DNA of 61,786 bases, filler included, from Platydemus manokwari (taxonomy: Eukaryota), in assembly GCA_037951405.1 (NCBI GenBank). It is 5 parts of 5 records of this genome, joined end to end, with 100 filler letters (N's around TTAATTAATTAA, not from the genome) between each part and the next. Parts side by side here need not be neighbours in the genome. Positions count along the whole stretch, not along the records: positions 1 to 12,655 come from JBBMOY010030013.1; 4 more parts are not named here. One strand, 5' to 3'. Each line of letters opens with the position of its first letter. The stretch's first letter is position 1. A model generated the notes under the pieces. It was given only the letters and a program-made list of their open reading frames with translations. It did no database searches and was not told the DNA's origin. The position numbers and the translations under genes were made by a program. Shown piece by piece: positions 2 through 5,149 of the stretch.

Positions 2-1105
2 AGACATCTTGGAAACTGGATGAGCTCTCGCTATATTTTATTCAAAACCGCTACAATTGCCATGTGTCTCATACAAGTACTTATCATCACATCAATATTC
101 GACATTCGATTATCCAATTTATCTCAAATATTCTCCACAACTAATGATTCCAATAACACGAAATTTCCAAGATCTGTTGTGGGATTCGTTCCCAATGTCG
201 CAGTGTTGGGATCGTACAACAGTTACAGTATCAATTGCATCATGTCTGTTAATATCATCAATGAAAAACTCTTCACTCTTTTACAACCTCTATTCGTCAT
301 TCTAGCATTATGCAATGTTATCAGCTTGATGTCATGGCTCATCAATATTGGAATCAGACAATGTCGACTCAATTTTATCAACAAACATCTCTCCACATCA
401 ATCAAACAGAAAAATGCATTACTAATTGATAACTTTGTCAATCAATTAGTAAGATGGGATGGCTTATTTGTGTTGAGAATGATGAAGAAAAGTTGTGACA
501 ATCATTTAGTTAATCGACTCGTTAATGAATTGTGGTCACAATTTAACGATCCAAATAAATTATACACCGCTGGTGAGGCCAAATCTAAAAATCATTTGTT
601 GTCATCTGATGAAATTTATGCCTTTCTCTGTGAACAAATGAAAAATTCAAGTATAATTGTCATCGATCCATTTTGTTCCACTGAAATTCTGGACGAGTGT
701 GGAGGTTTAATTTCATTGGGTCATAATCAACGCGATTATCAGATGGCAGATTTGATTATCGCTCCTGTCAATATCAGAAATCAACTTTGGGTTCTATTTG
801 TATATAATATTCAATCAAATATCTCCTATATGTTGGATCCATCCCAACAAGCTTTCCAACCAAATCATGTTCATGAAGCAGGAATGAAATTGACTGAAGA
901 AATAAATAAATTCCGTGATGTAGGTGTTGTGAATTATTGCAACATCGATAACAACACTGATAGAGTGAGACAGAATAGAAGTGATGACTGTGGTATAATT
1001 GTGTGTGGATATGCCATTAGTTTGAGTCAACAATTGCCTTTATCAACTCCAATCGATACCGATCAGATGCGAAGACAGATAAAAATTAATATGGCAAATC
1101 AATAA
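2..1105 (+). CDS. Innexin (TM3-EL2-TM4-C-tail) fused in frame to a Ulp1/C48 peptidase-like domain; 5'-partial
   Basis: The frame is open from base 2 (RHLGNWMSSRYILFK, matching the innexin GNYL..LY.F.K motif). Innexin hallmarks: KFPR, NCIMSVNIINEKLF, DGLFVLRMM, LVNELWSQF. The same ORF continues into clan-CE/Ulp1 motifs: LSSDEIYAF, DLIIAPVNIRNQLWVLFVY, YMLDPS, RQNRSDDCGIIVC, DQMRRQI. No introns; stop TAA at 1103-1105. Confidence 0.8.
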   Translation, partial: RHLGNWMSSRYILFKTATIAMCLIQVLIITSIFDIRLSNLSQIFSTTNDSNNTKFPRSVVGFVPNVAVLGSYNSYSINCIMSVNIINEKLFTLLQPLFVILALCNVISLMSWLINIGIRQCRLNFINKHLSTSIKQKNALLIDNFVNQLVRWDGLFVLRMMKKSCDNHLVNRLVNELWSQFNDPNKLYTAGEAKSKNHLLSSDEIYAFLCEQMKNSSIIVIDPFCSTEILDECGGLISLGHNQRDYQMADLIIAPVNIRNQLWVLFVYNIQSNISYMLDPSQQAFQPNHVHEAGMKLTEEINKFRDVGVVNYCNIDNNTDRVRQNRSDDCGIIVCGYAISLSQQLPLSTPIDTDQMRRQIKINMANQ

Positions 1106-1635: not shown

Positions 1636-1718
1636 TGGCAGTGAAAATTTGAAACGAGAATTATGGCAGTGAAATTTTGTCAGCGAAAATAATGGCAGTG
1701 TTGATTGTGATTACTGCC
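1636..1718. repeat. Three direct TGGCAGTG motifs at 28-29 bp spacing plus an inverted ACTGCC
   Basis: TGGCAGTG starts at 1636, 1664 and 1693; ACTGCC at 1713-1718. A TCGCAGA..TCTGCGA hairpin follows at 1741-1759. Confidence 0.6.
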
Positions 1719-3253
1719 TTATATAGGTAGCATGAATCACTCGCAGATATTCTCTGCGATTAAATCTAATGCCAGTGAATTTATTATTTTATCGATAGAA
1801 TTTACTCACTGGTGAGAGAAATTCTCTCTAAATAAATTTATTTCACAGAGAAAATATCTCTTGATTAAATTTAATCTAGTGATTATTTTTTTTGTGACAG
1901 AAATTTCATGCGCGAAAATAGATGACAATTTATTTGTCGCTGTTAATGCGCGATATCTCATTGCGTATTGATATTTTATAAAATAATTTATTATTTTAGG
2001 GAAGTTCGACCGGTTTCCTCTGGGTAGTTTTACTGATATTATTACTTTACGCATATATAAATAATAATTATTATAAATATCAATATTTCAAACAGGTTAA
2101 TGGTCAAAAATTCCAAAGGTTTTCAAAATATAAAAAATACATGCTGATTAAATAAAAATTGATACTTAAAAAATTGATACACGTTTCACACGTATTATCA
2201 TGTAAATGTATACACATATTTTTCCCAATGTAAATTAATTGTTATGGATTAATTGTTGGGCCAGAACCCCAAAATGTCTGTTATTACTTATTACATGATT
2301 TCTGCTTTAATGATCAATTAGTTTAGTTATTGTCTGGTTATAATAATGGGCCTTATTCTTTAACCATACTGAATTTTTAATTTAATTATTTTTAAGTTTT
2401 CATATCATGTGTTATGATTTATAAAAGAAAATACTTTATTGAGTGGTTTGTAAAGTAATTAAACATCTTATCGATAAATTATATTTTTTCCAAAAGCCTT
2501 TAAAAATAATGTGACTGATAAAGAAATAATTGCAGCTAAGTAAATCATTTAAGGTGCGCAGAAAGAAAGATTAAAGATGTTAATGTTGCAACCAAAAAAT
2601 TTATGTAGCATTGCTCTGCTTTCATCCTTCAGGCTATAATGAATTTTTTTGGCGATCCCTATATATAGTATTTACAAAGAATATATATCAATAAACTTGG
2701 CTTCGAAAAATATCAAAATTAAATTAATCAAAAAAAATAAGCAAATCAGACTTATTACAAATATTATTAGAAAATATGGTGGTGAGTAGGTATAAAACAT
2801 GACGTAATTATATCGAAAAGCAACTACGTCAGATATTATATAACTAATCTAAATATAAACCTGAAATCATACAGAAGAATACGTTAGCAATATTTTAATG
2901 TAACGTGTAATCAATGATTAAAATTATTGATAAATTAAAAGTAAATCAAAATGATAATGAATATACGTGATAATTAAAACTAAATGATAAATTAAAAGTA
3001 ATTTAATTAAAACCATTTTTCATAAAAACAACCAAATTTTCAAAGAAGATAGTATAATATATAAGACTGTATTTATTTTCATCGTAATATAAATTTAATA
3101 AAACTATTTGTTATTGGCATTTACAATTAAAAATATAATGTCAAACAAAAGAAAATTCTAACCTTTCGGTTGTTTAAACGTATCAGTTCTTATCAAAATA
3201 AATAAAAACACTTTGTCATTCTGATTCATTTTTGATTTATTTTTTTTGAAAAC

Positions 3254-3941
<688 letters not shown>

Positions 3942-5149
3942 GTTGGAAATTGTGTTGATATTTGATTTGATTATCATATAAACCATCAGGGGGGGGGCTC
4001 GTGACCCTTAATAATAATATGAGAGCTGGGCCAATTGTCATTTATATAAATCAATGTTTAATGAAAATAATACTCGATATAGCTGATTAATGTTTGAAAT
4101 TTATTATTTTTTTCATTGAAATAAACTGAAAATTTCATTTTTAAAATTTATTGAGCTGGGAGCTAGGGCCCCGGAAGTCGATTATAATACCCATATCGGT
4201 TGATGAATTAATATCTTCAGACTTGATTCGATGTGAAATTGGGGGAAATGTGCATATTTTGTCGATTTCTAATAAAGAAAAATTGATAATTTGTCTAAAT
4301 CTGTCAGCATAATTTTTTGGTATTTCAACCCCCAAACCCCCCTTCTCCATACCAGTTACGTAACACCTGTCATTCCAAGATTTCCCTTTTTGAAATACCG
4401 CTAAATCTGTCGAAGAAAAGGTTTTCAGTCAAAAAATAATTGAATAAATATGTTAATTATGTGCTTAGCTTATTTTCTTTTGGAGGGGGGTCCTTTGACC
4501 AGAAGGGTCTTGGAGTTGTAATTCGTTTTTATTTCAATTTTCTGCTATTTCTGGAAATCGCCGAATGAAATGATCTCAATTAAGAAGTGAATTGAGGGCA
4601 AAAACGATTTTTTTTCGTTAAATTAAAGAAAACTTGTTTATTATTAAATAATGATATTGTTTGCTGTTTAAACCTCACATGGATGAAAATGGCCGGATAG
4701 CCTTGATAGATCGGTTTGTGGATTTCTCTGTCGTCACTTATATATATATTTGAAAGCATGAATCTTCAAGTATTATAGGAAGGGAATTTCCCTTTCCTCC
4801 AACACAATGTATTCAGAGAACACGCTTCCCAGCAGTGCAATGTCATGCGGATAATTTTTTTTTGGGGTGGAACTAATAAATGGAAGCAGAAAAATGACTT
4901 ATTTAGAAAGAATATTGAAGAAACATTTGGAATAATTTTCAAAAATCCTCTTTAATGGGGTTAGATCCAACCATTCTCCATGGTAAATAAGATCCTCCGG
5001 CAATAAAAATAAACTTTTACTGATGTTACCGATTGAAACGTTAAGAAAAAAGTACTTTTTCCCTTGAATAAACTATTTAGAGATGCTTAGATGGGATTTT
5101 TCCTTGTTTTATGAGAATATGGGTGTTGATTCTATCATTTCCTTGAAGA

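What the first reader, a model, noticed from the sequence alone, without database searches (positions are those of the whole stretch)
2..1105. Intronless innexin fused to a Ulp1/SENP-like (C48) pseudo-protease domain
Seen in sequence: one uninterrupted frame carries the second half of an innexin and then a complete-looking Ulp1-type domain where the cytoplasmic tail would be, joined by a short linker (NDPNKLYTAGEAKSKNH). Established: innexins form invertebrate gap junctions and hemichannels and do not normally carry enzyme domains. Ulp1-like C48 domains are recurrent cargo of eukaryotic transposons (MULE, KDZ/Zisupton, Ginger), and virally encoded innexins (vinnexins) occur in ichnoviruses. 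Inference: this is either a new channel architecture that places a SUMO/Ubl-recognising module under an intercellular pore, or cargo of a large selfish element that uses an innexin to affect or reach neighbouring cells. The lack of introns and the location at a contig start (contigs here tend to break at repeats) favour a multicopy mobile origin. I know of no described innexin-C48 fusion, but I cannot search for one.
Basis: partly seen in the sequence, partly recalled or inferred. Interest (0 to 1): 0.9.

Follow-up and report, generated by a model that had tools for sequence, protein, structure and literature searches.

The report
Innexin fused to inactive Ulp1 domain
One uninterrupted reading frame at the start of this contig joins the second half of a gap-junction (innexin) protein to a complete SUMO-protease-like domain that lacks its catalytic histidine; that domain's nearest relatives sit in retrotransposons, so this is an apparently undescribed gene architecture, so far seen at one locus only.

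Summary
Window 2-1105 (+) is one open frame of 367 codons, cut by the contig start.

- **Innexin half:** residues 4-181 match the last 178 positions of the Pfam Innexin profile (E 9e-23).
- **C48 half:** residues 244-361 pass the Peptidase_C48 gathering score. A profile, an AlphaFold model (pLDDT 78) and Foldseek all show a full Ulp1/SENP fold.
- **Catalytic residues:** Asp, Gln and Cys are kept. The His position holds Leu.
- **Origin of the domain:** its closest relatives are not cellular SENPs. They are the first of two tandem C48 domains at the N-terminus of an R2-superfamily non-LTR retrotransposon protein, the kind reported for NeSL and Utopia elements.
- **Closest innexin:** at 52% identity, it stops four residues after the innexin domain.
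- **Search for the architecture:** none of 30 innexin-containing proteins scanned with Pfam carries C48, and no paper pairs the two.
- **Context:** the 11.5 kb downstream holds an ordinary intron-bearing REEP-like gene and no transposon or virus genes.

Best reading: a chromosomal, intron-free innexin gene that took up a retrotransposon protease domain as a cytoplasmic, probably non-catalytic tail. Expression, copy number, orthologues and the source organism remain untested. Interest is moderate.

The parts
2..1105 (+). Single open frame for the innexin-C48 product, 367 codons plus stop. The 5' end is cut by the contig start, with about 198 residues missing.
2..550 (+). Innexin half (residues 1-183): third and fourth membrane helices, second extracellular loop and cytoplasmic C-terminal region.
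   Evidence: Pfam PF00876 E 8.6e-23; 52% identity to P0001 residues 199-378; INX-6 5h1q E 5e-4
32..115 (+). Hydrophobic stretch, residues 11-38: third membrane helix of the innexin.
   Evidence: Kyte-Doolittle scan; alignment to INX-6
116..253 (+). Second extracellular loop. It holds one of the two canonical cysteines; the other column holds Gly.
254..355 (+). Hydrophobic stretch, residues 85-118: fourth membrane helix.
551..586 (+). Linker of 12 residues matching neither family. It is predicted to be disordered.
   Evidence: End of innexin homology; start of C48 homology; pLDDT below 50 for the first 15 residues of the model
587..1102 (+). Complete Ulp1/SENP-fold (C48) domain. Asp, Gln and Cys of the active site are kept and the His position holds Leu. 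It is of the 'first copy' type found in retrotransposon tandem C48 pairs.
1103..1105 (+). Stop codon, overlapped by an AATAAA hexamer at 1101-1106. GC falls from 0.34-0.39 to 0.16-0.22 straight after it.

Best explanation
This is a chromosomal, single-exon gene of an AT-rich invertebrate that could not be identified. It encodes a divergent innexin subunit whose cytoplasmic C-terminus carries a complete Ulp1/SENP-fold domain after a 12-residue flexible linker. That domain belongs to the clade of C48 proteases found at the N-terminus of R2-superfamily (NeSL/Utopia-like) non-LTR retrotransposon proteins. The simplest history is that a host innexin gene took up a piece of such an element. Shown: the open frame, the two domains, the fold, the residue pattern and the relationship to the retroelement proteases. 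Inferred: because innexin C-termini are cytoplasmic and innexins assemble into rings of subunits, each channel would hang a ring of these domains under the pore. With the catalytic His replaced by Leu, the domain most likely does not cleave. It would instead act as a binding module for SUMO or another ubiquitin-like protein, or as a scaffold that influences channel partners, gating or turnover. The absence of introns over 1.1 kb, next to a neighbour with an intron every 95-155 bases, fits an origin by retroposition, but that is inference only.
For: The frame is open against chance. Both Pfam profiles are passed. A profile of the domain and its relatives hits SENP1 (4e-9), Ulp1 (3e-8) and SENP2 over nearly the whole catalytic domain. 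The AlphaFold model has pLDDT 77.9 and pTM 0.79, and its Foldseek top hits are SENP2, Ulp1, SENP5 and SENP1 with TM 0.6-0.71. In the catalytic columns Asp, Gln and Cys are kept and His is Leu. In an exhaustive phmmer of 1.84 billion representatives, the only C48 hits among the best 150 are P0003, P0026 and P0048. All three are collinear tandem-C48 proteins. P0026 continues into a reverse transcriptase that matches R2 proteins at 7e-60 against 1e-22 for LINE-1. A profile of the first copies scores the window domain at 85 bits; true first copies score 65-77 against each other. N-terminal Ulp1-like proteases are reported for NeSL and Utopia-1_TSP (PMC4640811). GC is even across the junction at 0.33-0.34 and drops only after the stop. 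The neighbour is a normal host gene with introns of 58, 54 and 62 bases.
Against: This is one locus in one unidentified genome. No orthologue with the fusion was found in two protein word searches, one exhaustive search and two metagenome scans. The closest innexin, P0001, ends four residues after the innexin domain. There are no expression data. The N-terminal half and everything upstream are off the contig. An assembly chimera cannot be excluded without reads. No constraint test is possible without orthologues. The binding or scaffold role is inference from a missing residue, not a result.
Confidence: 0.55

Rival explanations
1. A young, functionless chimera. A fragment from the 5' part of a retrotransposon happens to lie in frame at the 3' end of an innexin gene or innexin retrocopy. 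The frame is still open only because the event is recent.
For: The fusion is absent from the nearest innexin and from every other protein examined. The catalytic His is already lost. The domain is of retrotransposon type.
Against: Nothing else of an element remains: no second C48 copy, reverse transcriptase or endonuclease by tblastn or Pfam. The domain starts 12 residues after the innexin ends and stops cleanly at its own C-terminus. It is only 19-27% identical to the known element copies, although resident elements of this genome could not be examined. Fold-defining columns are all kept, and the model is confident.
Confidence: 0.25
2. Assembly artefact: the contig joins an innexin locus and a transposon-derived C48 fragment that are not adjacent in the genome.
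For: The feature sits at a contig end, and no reads are available to check it.
Against: The join is in frame with no stop. GC and coding character run smoothly through it. No repeat lies at the junction. The homology boundaries leave only a 12-residue gap.
Confidence: 0.07
3. One reading: the gene is cargo of a large selfish element or virus that uses an innexin to reach neighbouring cells.
For: The C48 domain has mobile-element ancestry. The gene has no introns. The upstream side is unknown.
Against: The 11.5 kb downstream contains a REEP-like host gene with introns and no mobile-element or viral domains. There are no long terminal or inverted repeats. The named innexin relatives are from worms and a mollusc, not insects or viruses.
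Confidence: 0.05
4. The domain is still a working protease that uses a non-standard active site, which would make the protein a channel-tethered deSUMOylase.
For: Cys, Asp and the oxyanion Gln are all kept, unlike the second copies in the retroelements, which lose His and Cys together.
Against: The general-base His of the clan CE triad is replaced by an aliphatic residue. From established knowledge of papain-like cysteine proteases, this is expected to abolish or greatly reduce catalysis.
Confidence: 0.08

Closest known systems
Innexins (Pfam PF00876; solved example C. elegans INX-6, 5h1q)
   Same: Profile match over the C-terminal half. Two hydrophobic helices flank a ~46-residue loop, followed by a cytoplasmic C-terminal region. 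The relatives P0001 and P0074 supply a matching N-terminal half.
   Different: Highly divergent: 30% identity or less to named innexins and E 5e-4 to INX-6. It lacks one of the two canonical cysteines in the visible loop, and its relatives also lack one in the first loop. It carries a 170-residue folded domain after the usual end.
Ulp1/SENP SUMO proteases (Pfam PF02902, clan CE)
   Same: Full catalytic-domain fold. Asp, Gln and Cys are in the right columns.
   Different: The His of the triad is Leu. The single sequence finds no solved SENP at E up to 10; only the profile does. The domain is attached to a membrane channel rather than to a nuclear or nucleolar targeting region.
N-terminal Ulp1-like protease of NeSL/Utopia-type non-LTR retrotransposons carrying a restriction-like endonuclease (PMC4640811); here P0026, P0003 and P0048
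   Same: These are the closest sequence relatives. The window domain scores like a true member against the first-copy profile.
   Different: The window has one copy, not a tandem pair, and no reverse transcriptase or endonuclease. It is fused to a host channel. It lacks the His that the elements' first copies keep.
LRRC8/VRAC subunits (a pannexin-related four-helix channel with a cytoplasmic leucine-rich-repeat domain; PMC9399500)
   Same: Same design idea: a large-pore channel subunit of the pannexin/innexin kind that gained a folded cytoplasmic C-terminal domain, which then forms a ring under the pore.
   Different: A different appended domain, a different animal lineage, and LRRC8 is ancient and conserved. 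This is an analogy only; no homology of the tails.
Vinnexins of ichnoviruses
   Same: Innexin genes without introns, outside the usual gene structure.
   Different: Not compared directly (see referred steps). No named relative among the 30 looked up is viral or from an insect, and no viral genes lie in the window.

Membership tests
Innexin (PF00876) | Match to the family profile above the curated score | tested here: met
   81.5 bits against a cut-off of 25, profile positions 156-333
Innexin (PF00876) | Four membrane helices with cytoplasmic N- and C-termini | tested here: inconclusive
   Only the third and fourth helices are on the contig. The first half is seen only in the relatives P0001 and P0074.
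Innexin (PF00876) | Four conserved extracellular cysteines, two per loop (PMC9949713) | tested here: not met
   In the second loop one canonical Cys column holds Gly in the window, P0001 and P0074. In the first loop one holds Ile or Val in P0001 and P0074.
Innexin (PF00876) | Forms gap junctions or hemichannels | not testable with these tools
   No functional data
Peptidase C48 (Ulp1/SENP) | Match to the family profile above the curated score | tested here: met
   22.3 and 25.2 bits against a cut-off of 20.7; profile-to-PDB SENP1 4e-9
Peptidase C48 (Ulp1/SENP) | Clan CE catalytic-domain fold | tested here: met
   Model pLDDT 77.9; Foldseek SENP2, Ulp1, SENP5 and SENP1 with TM 0.6-0.71 over about 180 columns
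Peptidase C48 (Ulp1/SENP) | Catalytic His-Asp-Cys triad with the oxyanion Gln | tested here: not met
   Asp, Gln and Cys are present; the His column holds Leu
Peptidase C48 (Ulp1/SENP) | Binds or cleaves SUMO or another ubiquitin-like protein | not testable with these tools
   No functional data
NeSL/Utopia-like non-LTR retrotransposon | Reverse transcriptase and restriction-like endonuclease in the same element | tested here: not met
   No match to the P0026 regions beyond the C48 domains anywhere in the window. No reverse-transcriptase Pfam hit in the 30 open frames (51-115 aa) scanned outside the gene.
NeSL/Utopia-like non-LTR retrotransposon | N-terminal Ulp1-like protease of that clade | tested here: met
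   85 bits to the first-copy profile, as high as true members. The window holds the domain only, so it is a relative of the domain and not an element.
Vinnexin / polydnavirus segment | Viral genomic context and close kinship to insect innexins | not tested
   Indirectly, the window holds no viral genes and the named relatives are non-insect.

The most novel reading that the evidence does not exclude
The fusion is a working, lineage-conserved gene. In that reading an innexin channel displays a ring of retrotransposon-derived, catalytically silent SUMO-protease domains at its cytoplasmic mouth, coupling an intercellular pore or hemichannel to the SUMO/ubiquitin-like system. It would be a protostome counterpart to the way LRRC8 arose from a pannexin-like channel, and a clear case of a mobile-element protease recruited into a membrane channel.
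Probability: 0.25. Interest if true: 0.75.

Novelty: new variant of a known kind. Interest (0 to 1): 0.5.

Why it matters
Innexins and pannexins are normally plain four-helix subunits. The one well-known case of this superfamily gaining a folded cytoplasmic domain (LRRC8) produced a new class of channel. An innexin with a SUMO-protease-fold tail would be a second, independent example. It would also be a documented case of a retrotransposon protease domain being taken into a host membrane protein. If it is expressed and conserved, it offers a direct route to ask how ubiquitin-like modification is linked to gap-junction channels in invertebrates. If it is a one-off chimera, it is still a clean snapshot of how mobile-element domains are grafted onto host genes.

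Tried and rejected
- **Further relatives, all blank.** Word-based search with the C48 region. Alignment-based search, which returned only P0001 and P0074. Two metagenome locus scans. Exact look-ups of the window's product and of P0001 on public contigs.
- **Source organism not identified.** P0001, P0074, P0014 and P0019 carry only UniParc numbers without names. There are no Rfam families and no tRNA genes.
- **Hidden intron in the linker, rejected.** A GT with a good donor context lies in the linker. The only nearby AG gives a 79-base interval, which is not a multiple of three. It would also delete residues that align with the N-terminal part of the retroelement C48 domains.
- **Domain derived from the inactive second copy, rejected.** The first-copy profile scores 85 bits against 62 for the second-copy profile, and the window keeps Gln and Cys.
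- **Whole-product fold, not run.** A mixed alignment (A3) misplaced the C48 pieces at 8-16% identity, so no whole-product fold was run.
- **Database 'innexin fusions' set aside.** P0131 (receptor plus innexin plus EF-hands) and P0141 (lipase plus innexin) look like merged neighbouring gene models, so they are not precedents.
- **REEP-like neighbour.** Its exons were searched apart by reference. The joined exon model was left out.

Full report
**Observation.** The + strand is open in one frame from base 2 to a stop at 1103-1105, 367 codons. The frame runs off the contig start. Pfam places residues 4-181 on positions 156-333 of the 333-position Innexin profile (E 8.6e-23). It places residues 244-361 on Peptidase_C48, at 22.3 bits for the whole product and 25.2 bits for the C-terminal half alone, against a cut-off of 20.7. 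The quoted linker is at residues 182-198. The C48 part has no stop in its frame, against 7-21 in the other five frames, and none of 20,000 shuffles stayed open.

**The innexin half.**
- The only solved relative found by sequence is C. elegans INX-6 (E 5e-4).
- The closest protein anywhere is P0001: 382 residues, 52% identity over window residues 1-183. P0001 is a complete innexin that ends four residues after the domain, so it has no C48 tail.
- P0074 is a second relative at 51% identity, but it is cut short. Both carry only UniParc numbers, so they name no organism.
- By alignment with them, about 198 residues of the window's protein lie upstream of the contig.
- Two hydrophobic stretches, residues 11-38 and 85-118, flank a loop of about 46 residues. 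These are the third and fourth helices and the second extracellular loop.
- From established innexin topology, everything after the fourth helix is cytoplasmic, so the C48 domain would be too.
- The next-best named relatives, at 30% identity or less, come from nematodes, flatworms, an orthonectid and a mollusc. None of the 30 looked up is from an insect or a virus.

**The C48 half.**
- The single sequence finds no solved protease.
- A profile built from it and its four available relatives hits SENP1 (4e-9), Ulp1 (3e-8), SENP2, SENP5 and others across almost the whole catalytic domain.
- An AlphaFold model from the same alignment is confident (pLDDT 77.9, pTM 0.79). Only the first 15 residues, the linker, and one loop fall below 50.
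- Foldseek returns SENP2, Ulp1, SENP5 and SENP1 at TM 0.6-0.71 over about 180 columns. The domain is complete in fold.
- In the catalytic columns the window keeps Asp, the oxyanion Gln and the Cys, but has Leu where the His stands. 'Pseudo-protease' is therefore a fair description.

**Where the domain comes from.**
- An exhaustive phmmer search of 1.84 billion representatives gave 683 hits. Among the best 150, the only C48 hits are P0003, P0026 and P0048.
- All three share one layout over about 450 residues: two C48 domains in tandem, followed by a conserved segment.
- In P0026, a 1318-residue product on a 5.3-kb metagenome contig, this layout is followed by a reverse transcriptase. That reverse transcriptase matches R2 retrotransposon proteins at 7e-60, against 1e-22 for LINE-1.
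- The first copy in each pair has the full catalytic set. The second lacks both His and Cys.
- A profile of the first copies scores the window's domain at 85 bits, as high as genuine first copies score against each other (65-77). The second-copy profile gives 62 bits.
- N-terminal Ulp1-like proteases are described for NeSL elements and for Utopia-1 of Trichinella, both non-LTR retrotransposons with a restriction-like endonuclease (PMC4640811).
- The window's domain therefore belongs to a retrotransposon protease clade, not to the cellular SENPs.

**Context.**
- Nothing else of such an element is in the window. tblastn with the three proteins finds only the one domain.
- Pfam scans of 30 further open frames (51-115 aa) outside the gene find no reverse transcriptase, transposase, integrase or viral domain.
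- About 2.1 kb downstream on the same strand lies a REEP-like (TB2/DP1/HVA22) gene. It has at least four exons between 3254 and 3941, with introns of 58, 54 and 62 bases. Its exons were searched apart; the joined model was left out.
- Against that intron density, 1.1 kb of intron-free coding sequence stands out.
- GC is even across the junction at 0.33-0.34. It falls to 0.16-0.22 right after the stop, which is overlapped by an AATAAA.
- No long repeats bracket the gene.

**Is the architecture known?**
- No paper in the library holds both 'innexin' and 'Ulp1'. Papers holding 'innexin' with 'C48' or 'sentrin' are unrelated.
- I scanned 33 of the best 150 hits with Pfam, chosen for length, for two matched stretches or for an alignment running past the innexin domain. 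Thirty contain an innexin domain and three are the C48 proteins. None has both domains.
- Hits below rank 150 could not be inspected, and domain-architecture catalogues cannot be queried here. 'Undescribed' is therefore likely, not certain.

**Mechanism.**
- The best-supported reading is a host innexin gene that took up a retrotransposon protease domain as its cytoplasmic tail.
- Because innexins assemble into rings of subunits, the channel would carry a ring of these domains beneath the pore. This parallels the leucine-rich-repeat ring of LRRC8 channels, which are held to descend from a pannexin-like ancestor (PMC9399500).
- Without the His, I expect no cleavage. The domain would more likely bind a ubiquitin-like protein or serve as a scaffold.
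- The elements themselves keep an inactive second copy beside the active one, so non-catalytic copies of this fold are tolerated and perhaps used in this clade. These functional steps are inference.

**Rivals.** They are a young neutral chimera, an assembly chimera, cargo of a larger element, and a still-active protease. Each is listed with its evidence in the rival explanations.

**Limits.**
- A scan of the viral contig collection with the innexin half was left out, because it could fetch contigs of insect viruses that carry innexin genes.

**Verdict.** The selfish-element-cargo reading is not supported by the visible context. Interest is moderate until expression and conservation are shown.

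Noticed in passing
window 3254-3941 (+): A REEP-like (TB2/DP1/HVA22) gene with at least four exons (3254-3377, 3436-3529, 3584-3722, 3785-3941) and introns of 58, 54 and 62 bases. Its 3' end was not found.
   Followed up: partly
window 116-253; P0001 and P0074: This innexin subfamily lacks two of the four canonical extracellular cysteines, one per loop. That suggests one disulfide instead of two and possibly altered docking between channels.
   Followed up: partly
window 3960-5100: A stretch with G and C runs and a GC of 0.32-0.34, which is higher than in most of the non-coding DNA around it, directly after the last recognised REEP exon. There are no Pfam hits in its open frames and only weak inverted repeats. 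It may be a decayed repeat inside an intron.
   Followed up: partly
L001 538-1527; L002 113-1240: The retroelement relatives carry a tandem pair of C48 domains. The first has the full catalytic set and the second lacks both His and Cys, so they form a natural active/inactive pair.
   Followed up: partly
P0131, P0141 (database proteins): Two predicted 'innexin fusions', one with receptor and EF-hand domains and one with a lipase domain, look like merged neighbouring gene models. They are a caution about architecture searches in automated proteomes.
   Followed up: no
window 1636-1700 and 2931-3013: Short tandem repeats in the AT-rich spacer between the two genes: 29 bases x 2.3 copies and 17 bases x 5 copies.
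   Followed up: no
P0003 contig (no DNA held): The element reading frame on this 2.1-kb contig is called as three separate genes on one strand, so that copy may be interrupted. This was not analysed.
   Followed up: no
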